From assembly GCA_000388065.2 (NCBI GenBank), contig KB932207.1: a stretch of DNA of 44,326 bases; one strand, given 5' to 3'. Position 1 is the stretch's first letter, and the number at the start of each line of letters is the position of its first letter. The position numbers and the translations under genes were made by a program. Shown piece after piece: positions 2,827 through 40,050 of the stretch. The stretch is from Fonticula alba ATCC 38817 (lineage: Eukaryota; Protista; Nucleariida). The notes under the pieces are model-generated. The model saw only the letters and a program-made list of their open reading frames with translations, was not told the DNA's origin and made no database searches.

Positions 2827-3315
2827 AGGTTCCCCCCCCCCGCCGCCGCCCCCCGCCCAGCCCAGCCCGGCGCCATGCTCCTTGCCCTCCTGGCGCCCAG
2901 CCGCCTCGGCCCCTCGTCTCCCCGGTTGCGCGTTCCGCTGACGCCCGCCCCCGTGCCCCGGCCNNNNNNNNNNNNNNNNNNNNNNNNNNNNNNNNNNNNN
3001 NNNNNNNNNNNNNNNNNNNNNNNNNNNNNNNNNNNNNNNNNNNNNNNNNNNNNNNNNNNNNNNNNNNNNNNNNNNNNNNNNNNNNNNNNNNNNNNNNNNN
3101 NNNNNNNNNNNNNNNNNNNNNNNNNNNNNNNNNNNNNNNNNNNNNNNNNNNNNNNNNNNNNNNNNNNNNNNNNNNNNNNNNNNNNNNNNNNNNNNNNNNN
3201 NNNNNNNNNNNNNNNNNNNNNNNNNNNNNNNNNNNNNNNNNNNNNNNNNNNNNNNNNNNNNNNNNNNNNNNNNNNNNNNNNNNNNNNNNNNNNNNNNNNN
3301 NNNNNNNNNNNNNNN

Positions 3316-13262: not shown

Positions 13263-13883
13263 GGCGGTAGTTGCGTGTCGGGGGGGACACACCGAGGAGA
13301 GGCGAGCGGGAGAGATGGAGAGTAAAGGGCGAACCGGGCGCGCGTGCGGCTATGTCACACTGCGACGGGGCGCGCAAGAGGAAGAGGAGGAGGAGGGCAG
13401 CGAGCGGCCCGATGGATGGCTTCTCGGGTGTCGGCCGAGAGAGGTGTTGGGTGATGGCCCCCCTGGGAAGAACCTCGCCTGCGGGCCGGGGGGGGGGGGN
13501 NNNNNNNNNNNNNNNNNNNNNNNNNNNNNNNNNNNNNNNNNNNNNNNNNNNNNNNNNNNNNNNNNNNNNNNNNNNNNNNNNNNNNNNNNNNNNNNNNNNN
13601 NNNNNNNNNNNNNNNNNNNNNNNNNNNNNNNNNNNNNNNNNNNNNNNNNNNNNNNNNNNNNNNNNNNNNNNNNNNNNNNNNNNNNNNNNNNNNNNNNNNN
13701 NNNNNNNNNNNNNNNNNNNNNNNNNNNNNNNNNNNNNNNNNNNNNNNNNNNNNNNNNNNNNNNNNNNNNNNNNNNNNNNNNNNNNNNNNNNNNNNNNNNN
13801 NNNNNNNNNNNNNNNNNNNNNNNNNNNNNNNNNNNNNNNNNNNNNNNNNNNNNNNNNNNNNNNNNGGGGGGGGGGGAAGATAC

Positions 13884-15315: not shown

Positions 15316-16830
15316 AGCCGGTGTGGCGGCCGCCCCATATAACCACGCGAAAATGATGCACCTGCGCGGTGGTCCGGGCACCCCCGGGCGGGGCGCGGCG
15401 TGCCCCGGGCGCGTCCGGCTGCCGGTGCCGCCGCGCGCCACGGCGCCCCCGCGTGGGAGGACCGAGCGCGAGGGCGCCGGAAGCGTTGGGACATGCCTCG
15501 CCCCGCGAGGCGCATGATGCCAATGCATTTGCCGGACCGGGACTTCCGGCCGGCCCGCCTCCCTGGTGGTGGGGCCCAGGGCTGCTGGGGGCCAGGAGCA
15601 TCCGCACACCTCCCGGCCTAGTCCCTAAAGCGGAGGGGTTCTGATATGCCGCGGCCCTGTGTGGGAATTGTATTCCAGGTCACATGCCCCGGAAACCATA
15701 TTCCCAAGAGGTGGTGCTCGATCTCCCGGCCTGCCGCGGCGGCCGTGCCAACCAGCCGCACAGCGGGAGCGGGAGCGGGAGCGGGAGCAGGAGCGAGAGA
15801 GGGCATCAAAAGCGCACCATCGTAGCCCGCGGTGGCCGGCCGGCGGAGGGGGGACGGGGGGCATGTCCTGGGCCGTGAACACCGGCCGGCGCCGGAGCGG
15901 ACGCCGCAGGGCGGAGGCCCCGATGGCAGGAGAACGCGCGCCGCGCCTGGGCTGGTGTTATCGCGTGCCCGCGCAGCCTGCTGGGGGTTGCNNNNNNNNN
16001 NNNNNNNNNNNNNNNNNNNNNNNNNNNNNNNNNNNNNNNNNNNNNNNNNNNNNNNNNNNNNNNNNNNNNNNNNNNNNNNNNNNNNNNNNNNNNNNNNNNN
16101 NNNNNNNNNNNNNNNNNNNNNNNNNNNNNNNNNNNNNNNNNNNNNNNNNNNNNNNNNNNNNNNNNNNNNNNNNNNNNNNNNNNNNNNNNNNNNNNNNNNN
16201 NNNNNNNNNNNNNNNNNNNNNNNNNNNNNNNNNNNNNNNNNNNNNNNNNNNNNNNNNNNNNNNNNNNNNNNNNNNNNNNNNNNNNNNNNNNNNNNNNNNN
16301 NNNNNNNNNNNNNNNNNNNNNNNNNNNNNNNNNNNNNNNNNNNNNNNNNNNNNNNNNNNNNNNNNNNNNNNNNNNNNNNNNNNNNNNNNNNNNNNNNNNN
16401 NNNNNNNNNNNNNNNNNNNNNNNNNNNNNNNNNNNNNNNNNNNNNNNNNNNNNNNNNNNNNNNNNNNNNNNNNNNNNNNNNNNNNNNNNNNNNNNNNNNN
16501 NNNNNNNNNNNNNNNNNNNNNNNNNNNNNNNNNNNNNNNNNNNNNNNNNNNNNNNNNNNNNNNNNNNNNNNNNNNNNNNNNNNNNNNNNNNNNNNNNNNN
16601 NNNNNNNNNNNNNNNNNNNNNNNNNNNNNNNNNNNNNNNNNNNNNNNNNNNNNNNNNNNNNNNNNNNNNNNNNNNNNNNNNNNNNNNNNNNNNNNNNNNN
16701 NNNNNNNNNNNNNNNNNNNNNNNNNNNNNNNNNNNNNNNNNNNNNNNNNNNNNNNNNNNNNNNNNNNNNNNNNNNNNNNNNNNNCCCCTCTTCCCCCGCC
16801 CCCCGCGCCCCCTGGCTGCGCCCCACACAG

Positions 16831-17945
16831 CCCGTCATCCCCATCCCCACCGCCGATGTTGATGCCGCGGTCCACTACGGTCGCGGCCGGTCCTCCGTGT
16901 CCGGCCACACCGTGACCATCTTCGGCGCCAGTGGTCTGCTCGGTCTCGGCACCGTGCACCGCTTTGCCCGCATTGGTAGCACCGTCCGCACCCCCTACCG
17001 CGGTGACCACTACGATATCCGCCACCTCAAGGTCATGGGCGACCTGGGCCAGGTTGTCCAGAACGTGCGTTGGGTGCCCTTTTGGTGGCCGCTCTCCCCG
17101 TCCTCCTCCGCGCCCGGCCCCGCGCCATGCCACTCACCCATGCATATGCCCATCATTCGCACCTGCCCCGGCCTCCTCCACCCCCTTCCCTCCTCCTTCC
17201 GTGGATAGTTCTACTGCGTCCGCGACAAGGACCGCGTTGCTCAGCTGGTGGAGGGCTCCGACATCGTCATCAACCTCATCGGCCGTGACTACGAGACCGC
17301 GTACGCACCCGCACCCCGCGCCGCGCATGCCCCCCTCCCTCTGGCCCCACTCGCAGCCGCCCTCGCCCGCCCGCCCGCCCGCTCCGCTGCTCCTCTGACG
17401 CCCTCTCTCGCCCCGTCCTCCGGTACAGCAACTTCAAGTTCGAGGACATCAACATCGACGCCCCGCGCACCATTGCCGAGGCCTGCAAGAAGGCCGGCGT
17501 CAAGCGCCTCGTCCACGTTTCTCACATCAACGCCGATGCCGACTCCGAGGCCAAGCAGTTCTCCACCAAGGTGCGCCAGCTGGCCCCCCCTTCCCTCTCC
17601 CGCTCTCTGAGCCACTTTCGCCACACATACACACACATGCCCCCTGGGTATTCTTGTGTACTGACGGGCTTCCCTCTCTCTCTCTCTCTCCCTCTCCACC
17701 CCCTCCCCTTGCCGCCCTCCCATCAGCGTCTTGGTGAGCTTGCCGTCCTCTCGGAGTTCCCCGAGGCCAGCATTGTCCGCCCGTCCACCATGTATGGTTA
17801 CGACGACCGCTTCCTCCGCTGGATCGCCCGTACGTCGTCTCTGCGCCCGCGGCTCGCCCCCCGCCAGGGGGCTGAGATGCGCTCGCGGTGCCTCCCGCCG
17901 CATGCGTGCATGCATGTGTGTTGCATCTGACATCCCCCGCCCCCC

Positions 17946-18010
<65 letters not shown>

Positions 18011-18837
18011 CCAGGGTAACTGCGACGCAGGGACCCCCACCCGGCGCCGCACCCCCCCTCCCCCACCACCCCCCGTCCTGCCCCCCCCCCCCCTCCCGCC
18101 TCTGGGGCCCGGGCCTACTGGTTCCTTCGGCTTCGGGCCTTCCCAGCCGGCAGCCCCGGCGGCCCCTCGCTCCCCCCCTGCCCAACAGACATGAACCGCA
18201 ACGTCCTTTTCCCCGGCGACCTGGTCGTCAACGGCGGTGAGACCGTCTTCTACCCCACCTACGTACGTGGCACCACTGCCATGCCGTGCGATCCTTCTCC
18301 CTCCTCCCGCGCAGATGCTCACACAAACGCACGCACGCACGCACGCACGCACACAGGCCGGTGACGTCGCCCAGGCCATCCAGAACATCGCCGTCTCGCC
18401 CAACTCCTCCGGTAAGGTGTATGAGCTCGTTGGGTGCGTCTCTTCCCTTCCCCCGCCGTCACGGCCGCATCGCCGACCTTCTTTCCCCTCCCCTCGATGG
18501 CTGACAGCCCCGTTTCCCCCTCCCCCCCCCCTTTTTTTCCCGGCCGCCATCCAGTCCCAAGAAGTACACCTACAACGAGATTCTTCAGATCTACTCCGAC
18601 ACCACCGGCGCCCCGATCAGCCCGCTGAACGTCCCGGCCCCCATCTTCAAGGCCATCCTGCGCATGTACGAGCTCCTGCCGTCCAACCGCCTGGCCTCGC
18701 GCTCGGATGTCTACCGGTTGAGCATCGACGAGACCCCCACCCCCGGTGCCCTGGGCTTCGGCGATGTCGGCGTCGTCCCCGCCGAGCTGGAGACCATGGC
18801 CCTGCGCTTCCTGCGCCCGTACCGCGTTGTTTCTTAA
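16831..18837 (+). CDS. NDUFA9: Complex I 39-kDa subunit (SDR fold), 5'-partial
   Basis: Exons 16831-17064, 17209-17300, 17429-17570, 17727-17829, 18189-18262, 18357-18433, 18555-18837 (335 codons, phases consistent). Motifs GRGRSSVSGHTVTIFGASGLLG, HLKVMGDLGQ, SDIVINLIGRDYET, IVRPSTMYGYDDRFL and LRFLRPYR. The first exon(s) probably lie in the 15992-16785 gap. Confidence 0.93.
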
Positions 18838-19445
18838 GTGTGCATGCGCATGTACATGCACACACACACACACACACACATACACGCACATGCGCGTCCC
18901 CCGCAGGAGTGGCGAGAGCGAACATGGGCCACTGAGGCGGCAGGGGGGGGGGGGGGCACACCGGGGCGGCCGGGACACGCGCCGAGACTTACGCAGACAG
19001 AGCGGTTCCCCCGGCGCGAGCCCTTCCAGACCTCATCGGATGCATGCGCGGGCCCCTGCCGCTCCGCCCCCGCTCCCGCCCCCGCCCTCGCCCCCGGCCC
19101 GCCTCTCTCCTCCACCTCCCCGCCCACCACCGCACATACACACATGTCCACCCACCCGTGCTCTTCTTGGCGCATGCGTGCGTGTCACGCACGCCACAGG
19201 AGGGGCCACACACACAACCCCGCTGTGCACAGTGCCGCACGCCCCTCCCCCTTCTCCTTCCCTCGTGCCCTAAGTGTGCCCCTGCTTGTGCCTGCGCAGC
19301 AGGGCGCACCCCTTCAAATCTAGAATATCTCCCCACACACCCACCTACCCACACACCCACACGTTTTGTTTGTGTACACACCCATCTTGCACGCAGGTTT
19401 TGACGTCTATTCCCAGGTTGTGGGGGGGGGGGAGGAGGGGGGTCC

Positions 19446-19989
19446 TCATACCTGCACTTTGGCGTCCTCCGCGGTTGGCGACTCGTCCCCGACGGCCAGG
19501 CTCTCGACGACCCTCCGGACCGCGGCCATCGACAAGCCGGTGTGCGTGGCGATCTGCGCCACGGGCATCGGCGTGCGAGCGGGCCAGCCTGCCTCGATGG
19601 CCGGGCCAGTTGTCGCCCCCAGCAGGGCCAGCCGCAGGACATCCAGCCGCTCGGTGGGGGTCATCACCTCGCGGGGGGCCTGGTATGTCGGCAGGAAGTA
19701 CCGGATGTAGTCGGCCACTCGGCCGGCCGGGAGATCCAACTCTTGGGCAATCTCCCCCACCGTCAAGCGTGGGGCCGTTTGCGAGGCCAATATCCGGACG
19801 TTGGCCCGTTTGAAGGGGGACAGGCGCCGGGCAGCCATCATCCGGGGATGGTACTCCGGGAGATCCTGCTCCAGCACCCGGCGGATGGTGGATGGATGTA
19901 GCCGGACCACCGCCCCGAGCTCCTGGTATGAAAGGAGAACCGGCATGACGGGGAGGATGTCATGCGCCTTGGCGGGGCAGTTGCTGCTG

Positions 19990-20026
<37 letters not shown>

Positions 20027-23000
20027 TGCTGGCCATCAGCGCCTCGGTGAGTTTCGGGTCCATCAGGGCATTCAGTTGGCGCTTGGCCTGCAGCACCAGG
20101 CTCTGGCGCAGCTCGGCCGACACGGTCTGTGTCAGCTCCGGGGCCGGCACATACTCCGGCATCCGGGCCTGGATGATGTGCCGGGCCAGGGCGATGGACA
20201 CACGCGCCCGGGCGGCCACCGTCACCAGCGGCGGATTCACCGGGGCCTTGAGGCTGGCGTCCACCACAGCCAAGTGCTCGCCGGTGGCCTCATTCGGAGT
20301 GTACACGTCGTCCGGTGGCCGCCGCCATACCCGGGCCGCCGCTCGGAGAACCCGCCCGACCAGGTCCTTCGATAGGACCCCCTGTCGCCCGGGGTCCCGG
20401 TAGGTGGGAACCTGCTCGCGGACCACGGCGATCACCATGCGCACCGGGATGTGCCCGGCCACCTGGGCCATCTGCTCGATGGACATGAGCTCGGCCGGGC
20501 TTGGGCCCGGACCCGAGCCCGAGCCCGAGCCCGAGGGGGCCTCGGTCGCCAGAGCGTCGCCCGCATCGGCCCCATCGGCCGCATCGGCCGCGGCCGATTC
20601 CCTGGCCAAGTGCACGATGGTCTGAAACTCGCGCCAGGTCAGGGTGGTGAAGGTGCGAGGGATGCTCGGCAGCGGGCCCGCGGTGCGTGGCACGGCTGCC
20701 GGGTCGAAGGCCACATCCAGCACCGGGGCCTGGGCGTCCTCGGTAGTGGCTGTGTTGGCGGCGGCCAGCATGTTTGTGCGGCCTCGCCGCGCGGCCCGCT
20801 GCTGCAAACGCTGCAGCCGCATCGAGGGCACCGATGAATTCGACCCTCGGCCGGGCGGGGAAGGCCCGATGGTGGCCTGGCCGCTTGCCCCCGATGCCGG
20901 GCGCCGTGTTGCCGCTGCCACGACGCTCTTCCGATCTTCCTCGGTAGTGGCTGTGTTGGCGGCGGCCAGCATGTTTGTGCGGCCTCGCCGCGCGGCCCGC
21001 TGCTGCAAACGCTGCAGCCGCATCGAGGGCACCGATGAATTCGACCCTCGGCCGGGCGGGGAAGGCCCGATGGTGGCCTGGCCGCTTGCCCCCGATGCCG
21101 GGCGCCGTGTTGCCGCTGCCACTGCCGCTGCTGGTGCGGACGTCGGCGTGGCCGCCATCGGCCCCGCCGCGTTGCCGGCCCTCGCGCCGGCCATGTCGTC
21201 GTCCTCATGCCGCAGACCCGGCAATCCGAAGACAATCTGCCGGATCATCCTCTCCGACAGCCCGGTGTCGGCGCCAATCAGCCGGACCGCTGTCTGGGTG
21301 AGGACCGGCGGTGTCCGGTCAGCGGGGGGCCCGTCCCGATTGGCCGGCTGGTCGGCCTCGGACTCCGGGGCCGCCGCCTCGGCCAGGGCAAACCGGCTGT
21401 TCAGGGCCAGCACCCGCTCGCGCAGGCTGGCCGTGATGACCGGCAACCGGGGGGGCACGAAGTCCGGCAGATGCTCGGCCAGCACGCTGACCACCTGTCT
21501 CCGAGATCGGAAGAGCACACGTTGGCCGGCTGGTCGGCCTCGGACTCCGGGGCCGCCGCCTCGGCCAGGGCAAACCGGCTGTTCAGGGCCAGCACCCGCT
21601 CGCGCAGGCTGGCCGTGATGACCGGCAACCGGGGGGGCACGAAGTCCGGCAGATGCTCGGCCAGCACGCTGACCACCTGTCTCCGCGAGGCGCCGACCAT
21701 GCGCACGATCATGTCCAATGTGGGCACCGGGTCGTGGAAGCGCGCCAGCTGGAGAATCCACTCGCGCTGATCGTCCGTCAGTTTGGCCACCCGCGAGGGC
21801 TTGTAGTCCGGCCGCGCGGCTTGCAGGACCTCGCGCACGGCGGGGATGCCCAGGCCCGACAGCTCGGACAGCTGGCGAATCGTCAGCACCGGGTCCTCGC
21901 GGTAGGACAAATCCACCAGACTCGCCCGATCGGCCGGGTCTTGGGGCGACCGCCGCGGGGCCCGGTACTCCGGGCAGTGCAGCTGCAGGAATCGAGCCAC
22001 CCGCAGCGGGGCCAGCCCCGTATTCCGGGCCAGCTCGGCCACCGTCGGGGGGCGGATGCTCCGCTTCAGCAGGTCCATCACCATCTTGCTTTCCCATTCG
22101 TCAAGATGCCCGTGAGCAATGGCCCGGAAGAAGCCGGCCGGCCGGTCGGCCCGGGAGGCCACCTCGGCCAGCAGCAAGTCCTTCACCCGGCCCGGGGTGG
22201 CCTCGGCCAGGGCGGCCACCTGCGCCAGCTGGCCGGGGTCACGCAGGAGCCGAATGAGATCCGAAGTGCCGGGCAACCCATCGACACAGGCCCCGGCGGT
22301 CCGGCCAGCGTCAGGGGCACCCGGGTCCCCGGGCCCGGTCACCGTGGCCGCAAAGCCGGCCGCCGTCTCTGCCGCCGCACTCAGCACCCGGACGCGCAGG
22401 CGCAAGCGCCGCTCGGTGGCCGTGCCCGTCAAGGCCGGATGCTCCGGCATGTGAACCCCGAGCAGGTTTTCCAGCTCGGCGGCCGGCAAATTCGCCGCCT
22501 TGGCAATCAGGTCGACCAGCTCTTCCGGAGACGCATCCACCAGGGCCGATGCCGCATCGCCGGGGGCCACGGCCGGCAAATTGGCCCCCGGCATGGTGTA
22601 CTGTGCCAGCTCCAGGGCACGGAGGTACGGCCGTGCCACTGCGGCTGGCAGGGAGGCGCAGTTGGGCCGGTGAATGCAAAGGAAGCGAGTGACCGCACGC
22701 GGCAGGACCCCGACAGCCTCAGCTAGCCGGCCCACCGAGGGGACCAGCCAGGCCGAGGCATTGGCCTCGGTCGCACTCTTGCCGTCGAGGAGCTCCAGCA
22801 CCCGGCATTGCTGTAGGGGAGTCAGCTCGCCCCCGGATGATGAGTCCACAAAGCCCGGCACATGGTTCCGAATGATGCGTGCCACCAGGGTGGCGCTGGT
22901 CCCGGTGAGAACGGCAATCTCCTGGATGCTTGGCCGGTCAACCGGCCGCATGGCCAGCTGGATGATGTGGTCCTGCATGTCGCCAGTCAGGTCGGCGACG

Positions 23001-23045
23001 CCGGTGCCGCCAGCTGTCGAGGAGCATGCCATGCGGCCGGTGGCG

Positions 23046-23111
<66 letters not shown>

Positions 23112-23470
23112 GCGCTGGTGGCGGACTCCGGTTCGAGGGATTCCGCCCTGCCAATCCGGGCATTCTCTTCCTTGAGGATCTGCGCCACGACCGACGTCGA
23201 GAGGCCTACCTTCTGGGAGATTTCCAGCAGAGTAAGCGGCACCGGCTCCATGATGCTCGCTAGGTGGAGGATTTCCGTTCGCCGTTGCTGGCGCTCGGAT
23301 GACGAGGAGATTCGCAGCCTGGGACGTGGTTTGGAGGCCGCCGGGCTGGTCGTGCTCTTTGCCGCCGAGGGCACCGACAAGGCAAAGCACCGGGCTCCGA
23401 CCATTGGCGACAGCCGGGCGCCCATCGGCAGGAGAGACGATGCCCAGGTTGCGCGGCACAGGTAACCCAT
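19446..23470 (-). CDS. Intronless ~1,213-aa protein with about 12-14 tandem HTH-like units and a predicted mitochondrial presequence; function unknown
   Basis: Track ORFs 21401-23476 and 19446-22097 join into one frame after removing two adapter-associated duplications (182 and 201 nt). The first true ATG is at 23470 (23476 is GTG) and there is an in-frame TGA upstream at 23566-23564. Repeated pattern L[ST]xxx[QR]xx[IV]LxLA...P[ST]xx[EQ][IL]Axx[TV]G[LV][SP]xxxVxx[IFV]Lxxx[LM]Px[YF]. Confidence 0.82.
20737..21121. other. Assembly artefact 1: tandem duplication joined by Illumina adapter
   Basis: 20737-20920 is repeated at 20938-21121. The junction 20919-20937 is CACGACGCTCTTCCGATCT, the 3' end of the Illumina read-1 primer/adapter, which translates as DRKSVV on the - strand. 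Offset is 201 nt, so it stays in frame. Confidence 0.95.
21340..21685. other. Assembly artefact 2: tandem duplication joined by Illumina adapter, causing a frameshift
   Basis: 21340-21503 is repeated at 21522-21685. The junction 21504-21522 is AGATCGGAAGAGCACACGT (TruSeq adapter), which translates as VCSSDL on the - strand. Offset is 182 nt, a frameshift. Confidence 0.95.
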
Positions 23471-24894
23471 CGTCACACTTGGGCAGGCGATGAGGCGACC
23501 GGCTGGCAGGAGTTCAAAGGCTGAGGCTCGCCAAGTGGCCAGCCGGGGCGAGGGACGAGAAGATCAATCCGGTGTACACACGGGCACCGGTGGGATGTGT
23601 GTGTGTGTGTGTATGTGTGCGTGCGTGCCTGCGTGCGTCCCTCACAGGTCCCCAGAAACGCACGTGTGCACACGCAGCTGTGACCTGCAGGGGCGGGGCG
23701 GGAGCAAAGACGGTGGTACGTGGTGCTGAGGTGGTGGGATGCACACAATTGGAGAGGCAAGGCCGGGGAAGGGGAGGGGAGGGAAGAGAAGGGGGGAGGG
23801 AGGGAGGGAAAAGCGAGGGGGAAAGGGAGGGACAGAGGGAGGGAGGGAGAGATCTGTGGAAAGCTGGCGGACGCTTGCGGCGGAAGCATAGCAGGCCAAC
23901 AGCTGGGCGCCTGAAGTCCCAGCGCAAGTGCTCGGTCGGAAACCCGCCCCTGGCTCCATGACAATGCGGGTAGGCCGATTGTGGCCTCTTTTTCGAGCGG
24001 CGCAGCGAGCGCCAGAAGGAGCATGTCTATGCGTCTGAGAACATAAGCCGGTGGATGATGGGTGGGGCAAAGAGCGAGGGAGGGAGGGAGGGGGAGAGAG
24101 AGAGAGAAAGGGGGAGAAAGACACCTGGAAAGCACGGCCCGAACACCTCGGAGGATCCCTCACAGCGGGCGGAGAGTTGTTGATGGGCAGCACGATTTTC
24201 GGCCACACGGGGCCGCCAGCCTCGGTTCCGTTGGTGTGTAGAATCAACGAGGCTGGTCTCCGGGTCTCGGCCTCCGCCAGCCCATACACACGCGCAGACA
24301 CGCACGCACACGCACACACACCACGCTCACACACACACGCGCGCACGTTCGCAATCCGGCGATCGCGCCTGTGGTCCACCCCCCACTCACAAGGAGAGGC
24401 TCGCATTTGCATCCTGGCATGGTGACCATCATCACGTGCGAGGATGAGGGAGCACCAGCGCTCCCCGTTGGTCCTCCGTCTCCCCTGGCCGGAAGCCGCG
24501 GCCGGCCAGCCAGCCGCCGGCCGACATGCATGCCCGCGTCCACAGGGAGGAGAGCTGGCAAGAAGCGGGCGACTTACCAAGCTATACATGGTTCAGGGAG
24601 GATGTGTGTGCGTGTGCGTGTGCGTGTGCGTGTGCGTGTGCGTGTGGCGGCGACAGAAGGATGCATGCACGTGCATGTGTGCGTGTAATTTGGTCTATAG
24701 AGTACAAATGAGTTTTGTTGAGGGCGGGGGGGGGGGGGGGGGGGGGAAAGCAAGGGAAGGAGGGCGGGGTGCGCATGGAAAAGGAAAGGCAACGGAAAGG
24801 CGAAGGGAGGAGGGGAGAGCAGGTGACAAGGCAGTCGCGGCTGTTTGCCGGCGAGCACGCGGCCCCGAGGGAGGCACACACGGGCGCCACCTCC

Positions 24895-25912
24895 TCAGTC
24901 GTCGGCCGCCTTGAGGAACAGCTCGGACTCGGTGGAGGAGAAAATCTTCCGGACCAAAGCCTCGTCCTTCTGGGCGTGGGCCTGCTGCTGCTTGTGGATC
25001 TTGCTCCGCTCGACGGCGCGGCGGTGCTCCTGGGCCTCGATGCGATCCTGGGCAATCCACTCCTTGGTGCGCTGCACCGCGCCATCGACAACCACCTCAT
25101 CGAGGCCGGCCGCGGTGAGGAAGGAGTGCAGCACATCGGTCGAGCTCTTGGAGGTCACGTCGATGCTGGCCTTCTTGCCGGAGGCTGGCCGCAGCGCAGC
25201 AGGAGGGGGGGGGGAGAGAGGAACGGATGGGCGTCGAGTCTGGTCAGTGGAAGGGGGCCGACGCGGAATACAAGCATCAGGCCCGGCTTTTTGATGCACA
25301 GGAGCGCAACGCACTGAAGACAATGTCAACCATGGACTTGGTGGAGCGGATGTTGTCCGGGACGGCCAGCATCTCGTACGCGAGCTTGGTCTGCTCCTCG
25401 TTCAGGGTGGGCCGGGGAGCGGGCTTGCCATCGCGGCCAATGCGCTTGGTGGCCCGGGCCTCCGGCAGGACGGGGATATCCTCGCGCTTGAAGGCGATAT
25501 GCGTGTTGTTGTACTTGAGCGCGGGCAGCNNNNNNNNNNNNNNNNNNNNNNNNNNNNNNNNNNNNNNNNNNNNNNNNNNNNNNNNNNNNNNNNNNNNNNN
25601 NNNNNNNNNNNNNNNNNNNNNNNNNNNNNNNNNNNNNNNNNNNNNNNNNNNNNNNNNNNNNNNNNNNNNNNNNNNNNNNNNNNNNNNNNNNNNNNNNNNN
25701 NNNNNNNNNNNNNNNNNNNNNNNNNNNNNNNNGGAAGGGGGCGGAGAGCCCGGCGCGTACACAGTGCCGCCGAACTGGCGCGAAGGGCCGACAATGCCGG
25801 GCCGCACGATCACCGACTTGATGTTCCGAGGAAGGGTCAGAGCAGTGGGGCCAGTCTGCAGGAACTCCACGAGCTTCGGGATCGACATGCGGGAAAGGTG
25901 GGTACGAGACAT
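24895..25912 (-). CDS. MRP49: Mitoribosomal protein of the L51/S25/CI-B8 family, most like fungal mL61/Mrp49; internal gap
   Basis: Exons 25912-25761, (gap)-25315 and 25184-24895. LQTGPTALTLPRNIKSV, LPALKYNNTHI and IVFTSGKKASIDVTSKSSTDVL resemble, from memory, fungal Mrp49 segments (GPGAAILPKEV, LPRLKYHNP, IDMKNK). Confidence 0.68.
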
Positions 25913-27376
25913 GGTGGCGACAGGGGGAGAGGCGAGGGGAGGGGCGAGGAAAGGGGCAGCGAGGGGAGGGCGTGTGTCGCCGAGATCAGTGTGTCGGGCA
26001 CAGCGTTCCGCGGGAGAGGCAAGGGCAGGGGGGAGGGGATGGGTGTGGCGCGGGAGGGGACTGCTGGCGGCTGCCGCGGGCCGGCCTCATCGCCAAGCTG
26101 GTGGGCCTTATTGCCGGCCGCGCCTCTCTCCCTCTCTCTCTCTCCCTCTCTCTCTCTCCCTCTCGCGCGCGCGCGCCGTGGGCCTGGCCTTGCCCCCGTG
26201 CCCACGCACGTCCTCTCGCCCTGCCGCCCCCTCGCTCTCGCTCGCGCTGGCGCCCCCGTGCCCCGAGACACCACATACAGGCACCCGCGCACCCACACAG
26301 GTACAGGCACCGGCCGAGGGAAGGAAGATCGGCCCCCACGCCCGGAGGCTCACGCCGCCCACCAGCAGACCCTCCGCCGGCGCGGGGGGTTGGGTTGCCA
26401 CGGCACAAGGTGCCTGCCGCCTGTGTTGTGTCCCCCCCCCTCCCCCCCCCAGCCCCCTCCCTCGCCACCCTGGGCACGGAGTGCGAGCCGCTCGCGAGGG
26501 CCAACTTGGAGAAGGGTGGCCCGGCGCCCGCAAAGGCCGCATGTGATCTGGGACCGAGGCGTGGACAGTCCCAATCTGGGACTTCGGATCCTGCGCGCGC
26601 TCCCCGTGGCCATGATTCTCGGGCCCCGGGTTCTCTGCGCCGGGCGTCCGAAGAGGGAGGGGCAGAGCGCGAGAAAAGCATGGCCGCTGGCCCGGCGCCC
26701 GGCTCGCTCCTCTTTTGGTGAGCCTTTTTTTTCCGCCCGCCTCCAGGATGCTGACGACTCCCCCCCGGGGGGAGGGCACGCATGAGCGCCAACCGGCGGA
26801 CCGGGCCCGGCCCTTGCGGCCATGAGGTTCCCCGGAGCCACGCCCGCACAGAGTGGCGACCCCCCGCGTCCATCACCAGGTCTCACACACAGAGGCAGAG
26901 CAAGCGGGCGCAGGCGGGGGCAGGCGGGGGCAACACAGCTACAGGCCAGATCGGACGCGCATGCAGGCCTCCCCAGGCGGCGAGGTTGTTCTCCCCCCCC
27001 CCCCCCCCCCCCGCACCGAACACCCCCCGAACACGAGGAGCGATCTTGCTGGCCCCGCACCCAGGCCCGGATCTCGCGTCGCCGGTGCCACATCGATGCA
27101 CGGCATTTTCGGTGGCCTTACCACTGTGCCCCAGTGGGCCGAGGCAGCGTTGCCCGNNNNNNNNNNNNNNNNNNNNNNNNNNNNNNNNNNNNNNNNNNNN
27201 NNNNNNNNNNNNNNNNNNNNNNNNNNNNNNNNNNNNNNNNNNNNNNNNNNNNNNNNNNNNNNNNNNNNNNNNNNNNNNNNNNNNNNNNNNNNNNNNNNNN
27301 NNNNNNNNNNNNNNNNNNNNNNNNNNNNNNNNNNNNNNNNNNNNNNNNNNNNGTGCCCCGCCCCCCGCCCCGCATC

Positions 27377-28368
27377 ATGCTCCCGTCCGCCCGTGCCGCC
27401 GCGAGCTCCCTGCTCGGCCGCCCGGCCGGAGTGGCCCTGCGCACCGCCGCCGCGGCCACCACCGCCCAGGCCCGGTTCTATGCATGCGGCATGCCCAAGG
27501 CCCCGGCCACCCCGGAGCCGACCAGCGCCGCCGCCGCCGCCGCCGCCGCCGCTGCGGTGTCGGAGTTTTCCTCCCCCCTGGACGGGGAGAAGGGTTCCGC
27601 CGCGTCCCGTCGCCGGTCTCTGCCGCCGATTATCCCCTCGCTGGCGGAGTTCATGAAGATGTCCGACGGCCAGACCCCCCCGCAGGATGGCGACGACCAG
27701 GAGGTCTACGCCCCGGCCCCATACCTGCCGAAGAACCTGGGCCAGGGCCGCACAGTGCTGACCGAGACCTACGGCTGCCAGATGAATGTCAACGACACGG
27801 AGATTGCTCTGGCCTGCCTGCTGGACGCCGGGTACGAGCGTGCCCCGGAGGGCGCCTCGGCCCAGGATGCCGATGTGGTCCTGCTGATGACCTGCGCCAT
27901 CCGTGACAACGCTGAAACCAAGATTTGGAACCGCCTGACCGAGCTGTCGCACATCAAGGTATGGACCCTCCCTCTCCCTCTCCCTCTCTCTCTCTCTCTC
28001 TCTTTCTCTTTGAACCCCTATTTCTGTCTCTCGCTCGCCCGCCCGCCCGTTCGCACCCGCGCATGTACGCCCGGCCGGCCGCTCACTGGCGTCTGCATCA
28101 CCTTGCCTCTGACCTGTCCCTCTGCCCCTTTCCTCTCCTCCAGCGCAAGCGTCGTGGTCTGCGCGTCGGGCTGCTCGGCTGCATGGCCGAGCGTCTCAAG
28201 CACCAGGTCCTCGAGTCGGACAAGTCGGTCGATGTTGTCTGTGGTCCCGATAGCGTACGTTGTCCGCTGTCCCTCTCTGCCCATCTGGCTATCTCACCCC
28301 CCCTCCCCCCATGCTTACAGCTGACCCTGTGCTCCTCTGCTACCTACCCGACCTTTCATCCCCCCCCC

Positions 28369-28399
<31 letters not shown>

Positions 28400-29982
28400 G
28401 CCAGTACCGCGACCTGCCCCGCCTGCTGCACTCGGTCGACATCTCCGGCGGGCAGTCCGCCATCAATGTGATGCTCTCGCTGGATGAGACGTATGCCGAT
28501 GTGGCGCCGGTGCGCGTGAACCCGGACAATGTGTCGGCCTTCGTGTCCATCATGCGTGGCTGTGACAACATGTGCTCCTACTGCATTGTGCCCTTCACGC
28601 GCGGCCGGGAGCGCTCGCGCGATGCGGCCTCCATCATCCGCGAGGTGCGCCAACTCCAGTCCCAGGGGGTCCGCGAGGTGACCCTCCTCGGGCAGAATGT
28701 CAACAGCTATCGCGACACCTCCGAGGCCGGGCTGGCCCTGCTGGACGAGCGCGCCGAGCGCGGCGCCGCCACCACCACCGAGATGACCGGCACCCTGGCG
28801 CGCGGCTTCCAGACCATCTACAAGGCCCGGACCGGGGGTCTGCTCTTTGCCGACCTGCTGGACGAGGTGAGTGCCGCCTGTCCGGACATGCGCTTCCGCT
28901 TCACCTCCCCCCATCCGAAGGACTTCCCGGATGAGCTGCTGCGACTGATCGCCGAGCGGCCGAACGTGGCCAAGCAGCTCCACCTGCCGGCACAGTCCGG
29001 CAACAGCGCCGTGCTCGAGCGCATGCGCCGGGGGTACACCCGCGAGGCGTACCTGGAGATGGCCGACCGCGCGCGGTCCCTCATCCCCCGGGTGGCCCTG
29101 TCGTCGGACTTCATCGTGGGCTTCTGCGGGGAGACCGACGCGGAGCATGCCGACACCGTGTCCCTGCTGCACCATGTGAACTACGAGCATGCCTACCTCT
29201 TTGCGTATAGCATGCGCGAGAAGACCCACGCCCACCGGACCCTGGTGGACGATGTGCCGGAGGAGGTGAAGCAGGCCCGTCTGCGCGAGGTCATCGACCT
29301 GCAGTATGGCCTCATGTCGAAGTCCTCCGCCCTGGAGGAGGGGTCCCTGCATGTGATCCTCATTGAGGGCGACAGCCGGCGCAACAGCGACGAGTGGTCC
29401 GGCCGGTCGGACAACAACAAGATGGTACGCATCGTGGGCTGGAGGGCGTGCACGCCGCGGGGGGGGGGGGGGGGGGGGGGGGCCCCCCCCGGGCCCCCCC
29501 GGGGCCCCCCCCCCCGTGGCGGGGGGGGGCCCCCCCCCCCCCCCCCCCCCTCTGTCGTTCCTTCTCCGCCCCTGCACGGGGGATGTGGCCCCTTCTGACC
29601 TCCGATCCCCTTGTCTGCCGGTACTGTGTGCACCATCGCCTCTCGCCCGAAGGTTGTCTTCCCCAAGCAGCCGGTGCCCAACATGGTCAGCACCCCGGAG
29701 GCGCCGGTGTCCATGAGCCAGCCGCTGTCGGCGGCCAGCGGCTTTGTCATGCCGCAGAAGGGCGACTTCGTGCTGGTGCGCGTTACGTCGACCAGCGCAC
29801 AAACCTACCGCGCCGAGCCTCTGGCCCTGTGTGACGTCCGTGGCCTTGGGCTGTCCACCAGCGAGCTGGCTCAGCTCCACGTGTCGGAGGCGGACCGGGC
29901 CCTGGGCCTGCAGCGCATTGCCCAGCTGGACCAGCTGGTGGCTGCTGCCGGGCCGGCGGCCGCGGTGGCCCACTCCCACTGA
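27377..29982 (+). CDS. CDK5RAP1: Mitochondrial tRNA methylthiotransferase (MiaB/CDK5RAP1; UPF0004 + radical SAM + TRAM), ~680 aa
   Basis: Exons 27377-27958, 28144-28254, 28405-29424, 29653-29982. Motifs [26 protein letters not shown], the CxxxCxxC motif [42 protein letters not shown] and [11 protein letters not shown]. The N-terminus is Arg/Ala/Ser-rich with no acidic residues, ending ARFY|A. Confidence 0.95.
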
Positions 29983-30705: not shown

Positions 30706-32734
30706 CTACTTCTTGGCGTTCTCCTCATCCTGGTACATGCGCTCAACCTCGGCCACGTCCAGCGCGCTGCCAAGGAAGATGCCGGTCCGGGCGTGGAGCT
30801 TGTCCGGGCGGATGGCCAGGGCGCGCTTCAGACCGGTGGTGCACCGGCCGCCGGCCTGCTCGCACAGGAAGGCCATGGGCAGGACCTCGTACAGGATGCG
30901 CAGTTTGCCGTTGGGGGAGCTGTGCTCCGGGGAGGGGGGGAGGGGGGAGGAAGCCACCAGAGAGGCGAGGGGAGTGTCAGTGCCCCGCGGCGGCGCCGGC
31001 GGGATGCGGGCGACTGAGCGACCGAAAGAGAGGGAGAGAGAGGGGGGGGAGGGGCACATGCGAGGGATCGGCTGCACCGGGAGCCAGGGGCTCCGGCGAG
31101 GAATGGATCATGCACGCACCTCCTGTCCGCGGGGTAGGCGAAAACACCTCCGTGGAGGAAGGTCCGGTGGACGTCGGCCACCATGGACCCGACGTAGCGC
31201 AGGGAACGCGGCTTCCGAGTCCCATGGTTGTCGTGCTCATCGGCGCGGACGGCCAGCGAGCCGGCCGGCCGCAGCGGGTGCGTGACCTTGAGGGTGGCCT
31301 CATCCAGCCCGGCCAGGGGCTTGCCCTCGGCGTCGGCGGTCGGGGCCTCCGGGAACTTGCAGTGGTTGACCCACCGAGTGACGGCTGGCCCCCACTTGCT
31401 GGCGTTGCCCTCATTGATGGAGTAGATGTTCCCGCGCGAGGGGATCCGCATGGACGGGTGGGTGAGGATGAACTCCCCGAGGCTCGGGTCCAGGGTGTAC
31501 CCGTTGACCCCGTCCCCGGTGGCCAGCACCAGGCCGGTGAAGGACCCGTACAGGGCGTACCCGGCGGCCATGAGCTCGGTCCCGGGGCGCAGGACGTCCC
31601 GCTCGAGGGATGTCCCATCCGAGCCCTCGGGCTGTGCGACGGGGCCGGTGTCAGATATCTGTGCAGGACAGGTGTGCCGCCACCGGAAAGGCGGGGGGGG
31701 GGGNNNNNNNNNNNNNNNNNNNNNNNNNNNNNNNNNNNNNNNNNNNNNNNNNNNNNNNNGCGGGGCCGAGGGAGGTCCCCAAAGGGGCGGCGGCGCCTTG
31801 GGCCACGTACCAGGCGGTAGATGCCGAAGATCGAGCCGATGGACACACCGCAGTCGATGTTGGACGAGCCGTCCAGCGGGTCGAAGCAGACCACATAGCG
31901 CCCGGGCCGCGAGTCGGCATCAGGGCTGCCCTCGGGAGCGGCGGTCACAAAAAAGGCGTTCTCATCCTCCTCGCTGACCAGGACCGCCGCCCGGCCGGAC
32001 GTGCGCAGGGAGTTCATGAACACCTCGTTGGCCAAGACATCCAGGCGCTGGACCTTCTCGCCCTGGATGTTGGGGCCGCCGCCGGCGAGGCCGGTGCTGT
32101 GGGTGGCGAGAGGGCCGGGGAGGGGAGGGGTCACGGTGTCAGGCAGCTGGGACATGGCTGACAGAGGCAAGCCAAGGGGATGGCGAGTGGTCGGGAGACA
32201 CATACACGTTGGCGAGGCCGGCACGGCGCACGAGGGAAGACACATACTTGCAGCTCAGCTGCGGGATGGCGACCGTCATTCGAGAAGGAGGGCAAGTTGG
32301 CGCGGCGCCACACAAGAAAGGCAGGGTGTAAGTGGGTGGCAATGTGCAGGGAAAGGGGCCCGGCACAAGTGCGCGTGCGTGCGTGCGTGCGTGCATGCGT
32401 GCGTGCGTGCGTGCGTGCGTGTGGGTGGGTAGGTGCGTCTGTGCCGATGCCGGCCGGCACATGTGCCAGGTACACGCACCTGCAGAGAGACCAGCAGCAG
32501 GGTCAGATCGCCGGAAGCCGAGGCATGGCGGCGCTGCTCGCTCAGGGTGTGCCGGGTGAGGGTGATCAGATCGGTGACCGGGGCGTCCGGGCCCAGGGAG
32601 CTGGGCTTCGGCCGCGGGGTGCCGGCCGGCACAAAGGCCGCCGTCGAGCCGTGCCCCTGCGTCTCGGTCGACAGGGACAGGAGGACGCGGTTGGCCGAGT
32701 AGGCGCACGGAGGCTCGGGGTGCGTGGAGGTCAT
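30706..32734 (-). CDS. FBP1: Fructose-1,6-bisphosphatase class I, ~439 aa
   Basis: Exons 32734-32480, 32258-32206, 32096-31811, 31631-31120, 30919-30706. Motifs [65 protein letters not shown] and [14 protein letters not shown]. Confidence 0.96.
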
Positions 32735-38833: not shown

Positions 38834-40050
38834 ACATGGCGAAAGTCCAGCACCCCCGGGCTGGCACCTATGCCGGATTGTTCTGCTGCGCCCCACTTAC
38901 ATTCTCCTACTCAAGAAACCAGTTTCACCGTCAGCTCTCCCTCCGTTCCGGCGGCATGGGCATGTGGGGCGAGGGGGGGTTCTGTCTCTCTTGTCTTTCT
39001 GTTTCCCGCCTACGGGGAGGGCGAGAGAGAGAAGGCCGTGACGCGGGCCGTCGCGGCCCTTTTGCAGGGCATGCGCATCATCAACCTTCGGTGTGGATGT
39101 GACATATTCTTCGTTATTTTAATGGGGGATTATTTTCCGCCACCGCCCGTTCTCCTCTCTCCTTCGCCGGCAGCTTCTCGGGCGGGCGGGGGGGCGGGGG
39201 GCGCGGGCGGAGCGTTCACTGTGCATGTGTGAGAAGAAAACCCCCCGCAGGGTCAGGGGCGGCATTCTCAGTTGGGAGCACGGGCGTGGCAAGCCACGAC
39301 GCTTTCCGGCACCGCGCGTGGCTCCGAGTCTCCCTCGGAGGCGCGCGGTGACTGGAGCGGGGTGCGGGGCGCGACGGGGGATGTTGCGAGGCGGCACGCG
39401 CCGTGCACCGGCGCCAGGGGAACGGAGGCCGGCTCGGGCTCTCTCCCGGCTTCTGCAAGGTCCTCGGGCAGGGGGAGATACGCCAAGGGAGAACCGCCCG
39501 GTCTCCTCCCCCCCCCCCCCCCGGGTCCCCACGCAGCCNNNNNNNNNNNNNNNNNNNNNNNNNNNNNNNNNNNNNNNNNNNNNNNNNNNNNNNNNNNNNN
39601 NNNNNNNNNNNNNNNNNNNNNNNNNNNNNNNNNNNNNNNNNNNNNNNNNNNNNNNNNNNNNNNNNNNNNNNNNNNNNNNNNNNNNNNNNNNNNNNNNNNN
39701 NNNNNNNNNNNNNNNNNNNNNNNNNNNNNNNNNNNNNNNNNNNNNNNNNNNNNNNNNNNNNNNTCGACCCGGGGTGGGGGGGGAGGGGGGGGTGGGGGCC
39801 GGGGGGCGGCCGGGGGGGGAGGACATTCGCCTGGCCACGCCCCGGCCGCCTGGGCGGGGACCTCCCTGGGATCGGGCGGAATTCCGGGAGCCGGGCGCAC
39901 CTTGCCTTCAAGTGCACCCGCCGTCCTACCCACTGCACCAAGGGTCGTTCCCCAGCTGTTCATTTCGATTTGTTTTCTGGCATAATCTCGGAATAGCACT
40001 AGCAAAAGTACGGCTTCTGCTTTCCGCCCCTCCTCCTCCTCCCCCTCCCA

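What the first reader, a model, noticed from the sequence alone, without database searches (positions are those of the whole stretch)
19446..23470. Candidate novel system: mitochondria-targeted tandem HTH-array protein
Seen: after artefact removal, a single ~1,213-aa ORF of about 14 three-helix units (about 11-12 clear), some with low-complexity inserts. Helix 2-3 examples: LTLLEISQKVGLSTSVVAQIL; PSIQEIAVLTGTSATLVARII; PSVGRLAEAVGVLPRAVTRFL; PTVAELARNTGLAPLRVARFL; LTIRQLSELSGLGIPAVREVL; PTLDMIVRMVGASRRQVVSVL; LSYQELGAVVRLHPSTIRRVL; LTVGEIAQELDLPAGRVADYI; MPVAQIATHTGLSMAAVRRVV. Many units begin with an L[ST]xxx[QR] helix and end in a conserved linker (HVPGF, HCPEY, ARPDY, HLPDF, QVPTY, RMPEY, DLPEY, FLPTY). 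The first ~58 residues have no D/E, are Arg/Ser/Ala-rich and contain ARCF|A, a typical mitochondrial processing-type motif. No catalytic domain is visible. Established: organellar gene expression uses helical-repeat nucleic-acid binders (PPR, mTERF), but I do not recognise a family made of this many HTH units. Inference: a modular mtDNA- or mtRNA-binding factor (nucleoid, transcription, or intron/transcript maturation).
Basis: partly seen in the sequence, partly recalled or inferred. Interest (0 to 1): 0.85.

Follow-up and report, generated by a model that had tools for sequence, protein, structure and literature searches.

The report
Fourteen-unit DNA-binding-fold repeat protein in Fonticula
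This amoeba gene, broken in the public assembly by sequencing-adapter errors, encodes a 1,213-residue protein built from 13-14 copies of a classic DNA-binding fold; the family is undescribed and so far seen only in this species, and its proposed mitochondrial role is plausible but unproven.

Summary
Two perfect tandem duplications, 201 nt and 182 nt, each carry Illumina adapter sequence at the junction and split one minus-strand gene. Removing them leaves an uninterrupted 1,213-codon ORF. Independent environmental DNA contigs lack the 201-nt copy. The frame has strong coding periodicity, variants biased towards synonymous changes, and sparse matching contigs in RNA-labelled runs.

A unit profile finds 13-14 units. 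A profile built only from a paralogue still finds 9, against 0.025 per shuffled sequence. AlphaFold gives each unit three helices (about 13, 8 and 11 residues). Structure searches match single units to helix-turn-helix (HTH) and winged-HTH DNA-binding domains. Nothing solved matches more than one unit.

An exhaustive search of 1.84 billion proteins found one relative, Fonticula alba H696_00212 (900 aa, 13 units, E 2.5e-21). The gene itself appears to be missing from public protein sets.

Most likely it is a serial HTH nucleic-acid binder. Helix 3 is net basic and the unit-ending P-[E/D]-[Y/F] has an invariant proline.

Mitochondrial targeting stays open, at about 0.4. The leader has the right composition and an R-3 motif, but weak amphipathicity. 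A similar acid-free stretch lies inside the protein, and the paralogue has no such leader.

The scan had already flagged this family at other loci of the same genome.

The parts
19446..23470 (-). Coding region as it stands in the assembly: ATG at 23470, stop at 19446-19448. The true CDS is 1,213 codons once the two artefact blocks are removed.
   Evidence: GC by codon position is 0.71/0.55/0.84 in the N piece, with the same periodicity in the C piece.
21340..21521 (.). Assembly artefact 2: a duplicated 167-nt copy plus Illumina adapter (AGATCGGAAGAGCACACGT at 21504-21522). It shifts the frame and splits the gene.
   Evidence: Adapter-bearing reads of unrelated runs pile up at 21505.
20737..20937 (.). 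Assembly artefact 1: a duplicated 185-nt copy plus Illumina adapter (ACGACGCTCTTCCGATCT at 20920-20937). It is in frame and adds 67 spurious residues.
   Evidence: Independent contigs skip exactly 201 nt, 20736->20938.
23297..23470 (-). N-terminal 58-residue leader: no D/E, 8 K/R, Ser/Ala/Leu/Pro-rich, with an R-3-type motif RCF|A. It is a candidate mitochondrial presequence; this was not shown.
   Evidence: No in-frame ATG lies upstream before the stop; the upstream DNA is CT-rich with CA repeats.
23153..23293 (-). HTH unit 1 (helices 2-3 clear; no P-[ED]-[YF] ending).
   Evidence: Pfam HTH_24 E 2.1e-7, 30.8 bits against a cutoff of 21.9. Unit profile domain E (i-E) 1.6e-8. Also found by the paralogue-only profile.
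22832..22990 (-). HTH unit 2 (complete; ends HVPGF).
   Evidence: Unit profile i-E 8e-18; paralogue-only profile 3e-7.
22646..22828 (-). HTH unit 3 (insert between helix 1 and helix 2; ends HRPNC).
   Evidence: i-E 1.5e-8; 0.004.
22427..22579 (-). HTH unit 4 (degenerate and acidic, net -7; ends HMPEH).
   Evidence: i-E 2e-7; charge.
22139..22285 (-). HTH unit 5, the weakest. It is picked up only in the first profile rounds and has no linker motif.
   Evidence: 14 domains in iterations 0-1 against 13 later; aligned in A1.
21947..22105 (-). HTH unit 6 (complete; ends HCPEY).
   Evidence: i-E 2.3e-18. Pfam HTH_IclR 22.1 bits. AlphaFold helices 14-26, 33-40 and 44-54 of the model.
21785..21943 (-). 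HTH unit 7 (complete; ends ARPDY).
   Evidence: i-E 2.9e-17. AlphaFold helices 68-78, 87-94 and 98-108.
21623..21781 (-). HTH unit 8 (complete; ends HLPDF).
   Evidence: i-E 1.5e-17. Single-unit AlphaFold model has pLDDT 89.6 and three helices.
21213..21437 (-). HTH unit 9. Helix 1 lies inside the duplicated stretch, followed by a long insert; the unit ends GLPGL.
   Evidence: i-E 1.7e-6. The unit reads correctly only after artefact 2 is removed.
20652..21212 (-). Non-HTH spacer between units 9 and 10. It is basic, low-complexity and D/E-poor, and in the assembly it contains artefact 1.
   Evidence: An 84-residue D/E-free run; no Pfam hit.
20382..20651 (-). HTH unit 10 (Asp/Ala and Gly/Ser low-complexity insert; ends QVPTY).
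   Evidence: i-E 3.4e-12. A 9-nt in-frame indel polymorphism lies at 20564.
20133..20378 (-). HTH unit 11 (insert; ends RMPEY).
   Evidence: i-E 1.9e-13; 0.006.
19833..20129 (-). HTH unit 12 (poly-Gly insert; ends DLPEY).
   Evidence: i-E 1.3e-14.
19665..19823 (-). HTH unit 13 (complete; ends FLPTY).
   Evidence: i-E 7.7e-17. Pfam HTH_24 19.2 bits.
19485..19661 (-). HTH unit 14 (insert; C-terminal; no linker motif).
   Evidence: i-E 3e-9. Pfam HTH_IclR E 1e-5, 25.7 bits against a cutoff of 22.
19058..19445 (-). Probable 3' UTR.
   Evidence: A contig from an RNA-labelled run lies colinear over 19058-19329 at depth about 5, like the gene body. No splice is used at the GT that follows the stop.

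Best explanation
This is a real, weakly expressed gene. It is apparently unannotated because adapter-containing misassemblies break it. It encodes a 1,213-residue protein made of 13-14 tandem tri-helical HTH units.

Each unit of about 47 residues has three parts. Helix 1 starts L-[ST]-x3-[QR]; a Pro-rich loop that tolerates low-complexity inserts follows it. Helices 2 and 3 form the classic helix-turn-helix (P-x-[LS]-[ST]-h-x2-I-A-x3-G-L-S-x3-V-R-x2-L). The unit ends in h-P-[ED]-[YF] with an invariant proline.

Inferred mechanism: the net-basic third helices dock one after another on a long nucleic-acid target, most simply the major groove of double-stranded DNA, or on several sites at once. 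The diverged exposed residues of each unit would then give each one its own preference.

The acid-free, Arg/Ser/Ala-rich 58-residue leader with an R-3 motif makes mitochondrial matrix import the slightly favoured destination, at about 0.4 on its own. In that case the protein would act on mtDNA or its transcripts.

Shown here: the gene structure, the repeat count, the fold and the family restriction. Inferred only: nucleic-acid binding and the compartment.
For: - Gene repair.
- Coding signal: GC3 is 0.84 against GC2 0.55. Of 7 variants against independent strains, 4 are synonymous and 3 are conservative; there is also one in-frame 9-nt indel.
- Expression: perfect short contigs inside the gene in three RNA-labelled runs at depth 3-5. 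The same runs hold a spliced neighbour at depth 87.
- Units.
- Pfam: HTH families score above their cutoffs (HTH_24, HTH_IclR).
- PDB profile: hits the helix 2-3 region of IclR- and ArsR-type regulators.
- AlphaFold: a three-unit model has pLDDT 77 and pTM 0.58; a single unit has pLDDT 89.6. Every unit shows three helices.
- VIA-align: each unit superposes on HTH or winged-HTH domains (NiaR, TtgV, ArsR-type AntR, SelB) at rmsd 1.6-2.6 A over about 50 residues, Z about 7.
- Charge: summed over the units, helix 3 is net +16 here and +22 in the paralogue. Helix 1 is -4 and -9 respectively.
- Paralogue: H696_00212 has the same unit and the same linker.
- Leader features.
Against: - No binding or localisation data exist.
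- The whole protein is only mildly basic (pI 9.1, net +10). Several units are neutral or acidic (unit 4 is -7, unit 10 is -5), so not every unit need touch nucleic acid.
- The leader has low helical amphipathicity and contains Gly and Pro. A longer acid-free basic stretch sits mid-protein.
- The paralogue's annotated N-terminus is acidic with a KRPR motif, which looks nuclear rather than mitochondrial.
- RNA coverage is sparse and absent over the 5' third, so the start codon and the first exon are not confirmed.
- Z of about 7 for a 50-residue three-helix unit is within the range of common arrangements (note).
Confidence: 0.45

Rival explanations
1. The architecture is the same, but the protein is a nuclear DNA binder. 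It would be a lineage-specific family, possibly transposase-derived, that recognises long or repeated nuclear sequences. The basic N-terminus and the basic spacer would serve as disordered or NLS-like regions, not as a presequence.
For: - The paralogue's N-terminus has acidic residues and KRPR.
- UniRef names the paralogue 'Transposase IS30-like HTH domain-containing'. Pfam HTH_38, HTH_Tnp_ISL3 and HTH_23 hit it.
- The structural neighbours of two-unit stretches are IS30, Tc3, Mos1 and Pax paired-type double HTH domains.
- An internal 84-residue acid-free basic run shows that such composition is not specific to the N-terminus.
Against: - The leader has no acidic residue in 58 positions and carries an R-3 motif.
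- First-stage notes on at least 8 other loci of this genome describe the same kind of leader on other poly-HTH proteins. Those notes were not checked here.
- No transposase catalytic domain or terminal repeats were seen.
Confidence: 0.3
2. The HTH units have lost nucleic-acid binding, and the array serves as a protein-protein scaffold or structural repeat.
For: Many units are neutral or acidic. The units have diverged to 20-44% identity. Three-helix bundles are common interaction modules.
Against: The HTH signature (I-A-x3-G-L-S-x3-V-R) and a net-basic helix 3 are kept across the units of both proteins. Pfam DNA-binding HTH models still score above their cutoffs.
Confidence: 0.12
3. It is not a functional gene: either a chance ORF in 70%-GC DNA or a decaying pseudogene.
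For: Long ORFs are frequent on both strands of this window. RNA coverage is low. No public protein matches it.
Against: - The frame is open for 1,213 codons once the artefacts are removed.
- Codon-position GC periodicity is strong.
- A paralogue matches at E 2.5e-21.
- Nine units are recognised by a profile built from another protein.
- A near-identical intact sequence occurs in independent environmental samples, with variants biased towards synonymous changes.
Confidence: 0.03

Closest known systems
Fonticula alba H696_00212 (hypothetical protein, 900 aa; P0001)
   Same: It has the same unit of about 47 residues, the same P-[ED]-[YF] unit ending and 13 tandem units. Similarity is significant (E 2.5e-21, 31% identity over 5 stretches).
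   Different: It is shorter and far more regular, with unit pairs up to 49% identical; units here are 20-44% identical. It has few low-complexity inserts and no presequence-like N-terminus. The unit order of the two proteins is not collinear.
Bacterial winged-HTH regulators (IclR/TtgV, ArsR/SmtB, AsnC/Lrp, NiaR)
   Same: The three-helix core and the helix 2-3 sequence pattern match: P-x-L-S-x-x-E-I-A-x-x-x-G-L-S-x-x-x-V-x-R-x-L. Evidence is the profile hit to 2g7u at E 3.4e-5 and VIA-align Z 7.0 with rmsd 1.6-2.1 A.
   Different: The model has no beta-hairpin wing after helix 3 and no strand anywhere. There is no effector or dimerisation domain. These regulators have one HTH per chain, against 13-14 here.
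Multi-HTH DNA-binding modules of transposases and their relatives (IS30 HTH1+HTH2, Tc3/Mos1 bipartite domain, Pax paired domain, CENP-B)
   Same: These are consecutive tri-helical HTH domains joined by short linkers. They are the top multi-unit structural neighbours. Pfam HTH_38, HTH_23 and HTH_Tnp_ISL3 hit the paralogue.
   Different: They have two units, not 14. All TM-scores are below 0.4 and Foldseek E-values against PDB and Swiss-Prot are not significant. No DDE/rve catalytic domain is present.
Organellar helical-repeat nucleic-acid binders (PPR, OPR, HPR, mTERF) and TALE arrays
   Same: The concept is shared: a tandem array of small helical modules with conserved scaffold positions and variable exposed positions. 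The family is lineage-expanded, and a presequence is possible.
   Different: Those repeats are two-helix hairpins, or mTERF's three helices, of 30-40 residues that stack into a solenoid. Here each unit is a self-contained HTH domain. No Pfam PPR, mTERF or TAL hit was found, and no solved solenoid matched more than one unit.
Arrays of winged-helix domains in TFIIIC tau138/GTF3C1 and SelB
   Same: Several HTH-type domains lie in one chain and bind DNA (TFIIIC) or RNA (SelB). Both appear among the weak Foldseek hits.
   Different: There is no sequence match to any solved chain and no B-block_TFIIIC Pfam hit. Their domains are winged and mutually dissimilar. Here the units are clear repeats of one another.

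Membership tests
Tri-helical helix-turn-helix DNA-binding fold (Pfam HTH clan) | A three-helix bundle in which helix 2, a tight turn and helix 3 form the HTH. | tested here: met
   AlphaFold gives helices of 11-13, 8 and 11 residues per unit, with a 3-residue turn between helices 2 and 3. Units superpose on solved HTH domains at rmsd 1.6-2.6 A.
Tri-helical helix-turn-helix DNA-binding fold (Pfam HTH clan) | A profile match to curated HTH families above the gathering score. | tested here: met
   HTH_24 scores 30.8 bits (cutoff 21.9). HTH_IclR scores 22.1 and 25.7 bits (cutoff 22). The paralogue scores 54 bits on HTH_24.
Tri-helical helix-turn-helix DNA-binding fold (Pfam HTH clan) | It binds nucleic acid through helix 3. 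| not testable with these tools
   Only indirect evidence: helix 3 is net +16 over the units, against -4 for helix 1.
Fonticula tandem-HTH repeat family (H696_00212-like) | Significant full-length sequence similarity to another member. | tested here: met
   phmmer E 2.5e-21. It was the only hit with E<=0.001 among 1.84 billion representatives.
Fonticula tandem-HTH repeat family (H696_00212-like) | Eight or more tandem units that end in h-P-[ED]-[YF]. | tested here: met
   13-14 units here. Pro is invariant in 20/20 aligned units of the two proteins.
Fonticula tandem-HTH repeat family (H696_00212-like) | An N-terminal mitochondrial-type leader, as claimed for other members in earlier scan notes. 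| tested here: inconclusive
   A leader with the right composition and an R-3 motif is present here. It is absent from H696_00212. The other members could not be fetched.
Winged-helix regulators (IclR, ArsR, MarR, AsnC) | A beta-hairpin wing after helix 3. | tested here: not met
   No strand is predicted in either model. Helix 3 runs straight into the P-[ED]-[YF] ending and then the next unit.
IS30 / Tc1-mariner transposases | A DDE (rve-type) catalytic domain after the HTH region. | tested here: not met
   Neither piece has a catalytic Pfam hit. Only HTH families hit.
PPR / OPR / HPR / mTERF organellar repeat proteins | Helical-hairpin or mTERF repeats of 30-40 residues, recognised by the family profiles. 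| tested here: not met
   No such Pfam hit at E<=1. The units are three-helix HTH domains of about 47 residues.
PPR / OPR / HPR / mTERF organellar repeat proteins | Import into an organelle. | not testable with these tools
   Composition and motif only. No targeting predictor or localisation data were available.
TFIIIC tau138 (B-block-binding subunit) | The B-block_TFIIIC domain, or similarity to solved tau138/GTF3C1 chains. | tested here: not met
   No Pfam hit. No PDB sequence hit. The Foldseek match to 8cli_A is weak: E 0.13, TM 0.22.
Myb/SANT repeat arrays | Regularly spaced tryptophans (or aromatic residues) forming the core of each repeat. | tested here: not met
   Trp makes up 0.6% of residues. 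The conserved core positions are L, L, I, A, G, L, V and L.

The most novel reading that the evidence does not exclude
Fonticula has evolved its own expanded class of organelle-targeted modular nucleic-acid readers from the HTH fold. It would be an independent counterpart of PPR, OPR, HPR and mTERF. Each of up to 14 units would contribute a few bases of specificity through the variable exposed residues of helix 3, so that a recognition code could be read off and re-engineered.
Probability: 0.15. Interest if true: 0.85.

Novelty: new variant of a known kind. Interest (0 to 1): 0.6.

Why it matters
The HTH is the most familiar DNA-binding fold, yet chains of 13-14 of them with a fixed unit ending have not been described. 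The usual number is one to about five, as in Myb, Pax, SelB and ZHX.

If the array reads a long target unit by unit, it would be a new natural scaffold for programmable nucleic-acid recognition. If the leaders really are presequences, it would be another case of a lineage inventing its own organellar gene-expression factors, here in a close relative of fungi.

There is also a practical point. The public Fonticula assembly contains adapter-mediated duplications that break genes, and this gene seems to have dropped out of the protein sets because of them.

Tried and rejected
Searches that found nothing useful:
- Word-index homologue searches with the C piece, with the paralogue and with a four-row alignment found only the paralogue itself. 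Low-complexity words and the length window probably limited them.
- A JGI metagenome scan with units 6-8 found no relative.
- Exact look-ups of the two assembly ORFs found no annotated product.
- 2026 RNA-seq runs offered under the same species label as some DNA holders do not contain the organism. They matched only the adapter blocks and a poly-G stretch.
- ESM Atlas feature hits (Bacteroidota multi-HTH, DUF7317) scored 0.66, too low to count.
- Four literature searches found no description of such a family. The 'helix-turn-helix repeats' in the trypanosome mtTF1 preprint are mentioned only once, without detail, and give no evidence of a related family.

Readings considered and rejected:
- A splice at the GT that overlaps the stop codon was rejected because an RNA-run contig is colinear through 19058-19329.
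- TFIIIC tau138, Myb arrays, transposase, and PPR/mTERF-type repeats were each rejected on a defining feature (see the membership tests).

Controls that did not work:
- The neighbouring NDUFA9 gene could not serve as a positive control for a Fonticula presequence, because its 5' end lies in an assembly gap.
- The 'hypervariable recognition helix' idea (another note on this locus): exposed helix-3 positions are variable (entropy 2.8-3.2 bits), but no more so than exposed helix-1 positions (3.0-3.4 bits).


Full report
**What is in the sequence.** On the minus strand, two long ORFs overlap: 21401-23476 (691 aa) and 19446-22097 (883 aa). Both read the peptide RRQVVSVLAEHLPDF...ADQPAN, each in a different copy of a repeat. 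The region holds two perfect tandem duplications:
- period 201 at 20737-21122, in frame;
- period 182 at 21340-21685, which shifts the frame.

Both junctions carry Illumina TruSeq adapter: ACGACGCTCTTCCGATCT at 20920-20937 and AGATCGGAAGAGCACACGT at 21504-21522. That is 2 adapter matches against 0.05 expected by chance. These are assembly artefacts. Removing one copy plus adapter at each site gives a single open frame of 1,215 codons, or 1,213 aa from the first ATG at 23470.

Contigs from a soil metagenome and from a 2025 sample are 99.8% identical to the window and jump 20736->20938, so they lack the 201-nt block. No contig bridged the 182-nt site, so the adapter is the evidence there. After its removal, unit 9 reads through correctly.

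**Is it a gene?**
- GC by codon position is 0.71/0.55/0.84 in the N piece, with the same periodicity downstream.
- Of seven single-base differences to the environmental strains, four are third-position synonymous changes and three are conservative (R>K, T>A, A>V). The one indel is 9 nt and in frame.
- Three small 2012 runs labelled RNA hold a spliced contig of the neighbouring gene at depth about 87. They also give perfect short contigs inside this gene (19628-19821, 19796-19972, 20314-20482, 20531-20770, 21673-21852) and over 19058-19329, at depth 3-5.

This fits low expression and a 3' UTR of about 390 nt. DNA carry-over in those libraries cannot be excluded, and the 5' third has no RNA cover.

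Neither protein library holds this protein, and neither assembly ORF is an annotated product. I infer that the gene is missing from public protein sets, probably because of the misassembly.

**The repeats.** An iterated unit profile finds 13-14 units here and 13 in the paralogue. A non-circular test used a profile built only from 11 paralogue units. It finds 9 units here at domain E<=0.01, against 5 single hits in 200 shuffles.

Conserved positions are L8, L11, P16, [LP]18, [ST]19, h20, I23, A24, G28, L29, S30, V34, R35 and L38, then P43 (20/20), [ED]44 and [YF]45. Low-complexity inserts (poly-Ala/Thr, Asp/Ala, Gly/Ser, poly-Gly) sit between helix 1 and helix 2. A basic spacer of about 120 residues separates units 9 and 10.

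Units here are only 20-44% identical to one another and are not collinear with the paralogue's units. The paralogue's units reach 49% identity to each other. This array is therefore old and diversified.

**Fold.**
- Pfam HTH_24 and HTH_IclR score above their cutoffs on single units.
- A unit profile hits the HTH of IclR-, ArsR- and AsnC-type regulators in the PDB, best 2g7u at E 3.4e-5.
- AlphaFold on units 6-8, with other triplets as the alignment, gives pLDDT 77 and pTM 0.58, with three helices per unit.
- One unit modelled with all 27 units as the alignment gives pLDDT 89.6.
- VIA-align superposes single units on NiaR, TtgV, AntR (ArsR-type), BirA, ScpB and SelB domains at Z 6-7 and rmsd 1.6-2.6 A over about 50 residues. 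No solved chain aligns over more than about 60 residues.
- Foldseek against PDB and Swiss-Prot gives only non-significant multi-HTH hits: SelB, sigma factors, Tc3, Pax, DUX4, Myb and TFIIIC.
- No strand is predicted, so the units are wingless.

**Relatives.** phmmer of the 649-residue N piece against 1.84 billion representatives returned one protein, P0001. This is H696_00212 of Fonticula alba: 900 aa, E 2.5e-21, encoded on KB932201.1 of GCA_000388065.2. This supports the window being Fonticula, which earlier scan notes also state; the window's own origin was not tested directly. About 41 bits are needed for E<=0.001 in that library, so more distant members would be missed.

AlphaFold DB fold clusters give significant but low-TM (below 0.4) multi-HTH hits. 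Among them are four accessions of the A0A058Z series and five of the A0A137 series. From memory these are Fonticula and Conidiobolus proteins, but the organism column was blank, so this is unverified.

First-stage notes list at least eight other loci of this genome with poly-HTH proteins and presequence-like leaders. One follow-up called it a Fonticula-only family. I could not fetch those sequences. **The scan has therefore met this family before, on other DNA.**

**Function.** No catalytic domain is present. Summed over the units, helix 3 is net +16 here and +22 in the paralogue. Helices 1 and 2 are neutral to negative. That is the polarity expected if helix 3 faces nucleic acid.

Against a simple picture, the whole protein has pI 9.1 and net charge only +10, and some units are acidic. 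I therefore favour a serial HTH nucleic-acid binder in which not every unit need be active. I hold a pure scaffold role at about 0.1.

**Compartment.** The first 58 residues have no D/E, 8 K/R, many S/A/L/P, and RCF|A, which fits the R-3 cleavage pattern. With 10.2% D+E elsewhere, the chance of such a run is about 0.002.

Three points weigh against this. The hydrophobic moment is low (maximum 0.47 in 11-residue windows). An even longer acid-free run lies at residues 699-782. The paralogue starts MRRAPADDPD...KRPR, though its first exon is only a model. No targeting predictor was available. I put mitochondrial import at about 0.4 and a nuclear role at about 0.3.

**Comparison and novelty.** The unit is an ordinary HTH. 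The architecture is not ordinary: 13-14 units, an invariant Pro-acidic-aromatic ending, and restriction to one species as far as the searches reach. No paper in the library describes it. I rate it a new variant of a known kind. If the family proves to be organelle-targeted and modular in recognition, its importance would rise.

Noticed in passing
window 16786-18837 (+): A convergent neighbour encodes an NDUFA9/NUEM-type complex I 39-kDa subunit. The last exon, 18556-18834, hits solved NDUFA9 chains at E 1.7e-4 to 6e-3. An RNA-run contig at depth about 87 confirms a GT-AG intron at 18434-18554. The 5' end of the gene lies in the assembly gap 15992-16784.
   Followed up: partly
window 19446-23470 (-): No identical or near-identical protein is in either large protein library, and neither assembly ORF is an annotated product. 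The gene appears to be missing from public protein sets.
   Followed up: partly
window 18300-23900: DNA 99.8% identical to this stretch occurs in a 2022 soil metagenome, in four 2025 samples filed under another organism label, and more thinly in sediment and sludge metagenomes. The organism, or a very close strain, is therefore present in the environment or as a contaminant.
   Followed up: partly
window 20557-20591: The (TCGGCCGCA)n repeat that encodes the Asp/Ala-rich insert of unit 10 is 9 nt shorter in both independent samples. This is an in-frame length polymorphism.
   Followed up: no
window 8230-10125 (-): An ORF piece with a strong Exportin-T match (Pfam PF19282, E 6e-63).
   Followed up: no
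window 27925-29598 (+): An ORF with a Radical SAM domain (PF04055, E 6.8e-28).
   Followed up: no
window, eight N runs (2964-3315, 10159-10318, 13500-13865, 15992-16784, 25530-25732, 27157-27352, 31704-31759, 39539-39763): This is a draft scaffold with many gaps. Together with the adapter-bearing duplications, they suggest that other genes of this assembly may be broken in the same way.
   Followed up: no
AlphaFold DB cluster hits (A0A137P...): Several multi-HTH proteins of 235-549 aa, named 'Mos1 transposase HTH domain-containing', are among the best fold matches. From memory their accession series belongs to the fungus Conidiobolus coronatus. This may be a second holomycotan expansion of HTH arrays.
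   Followed up: no
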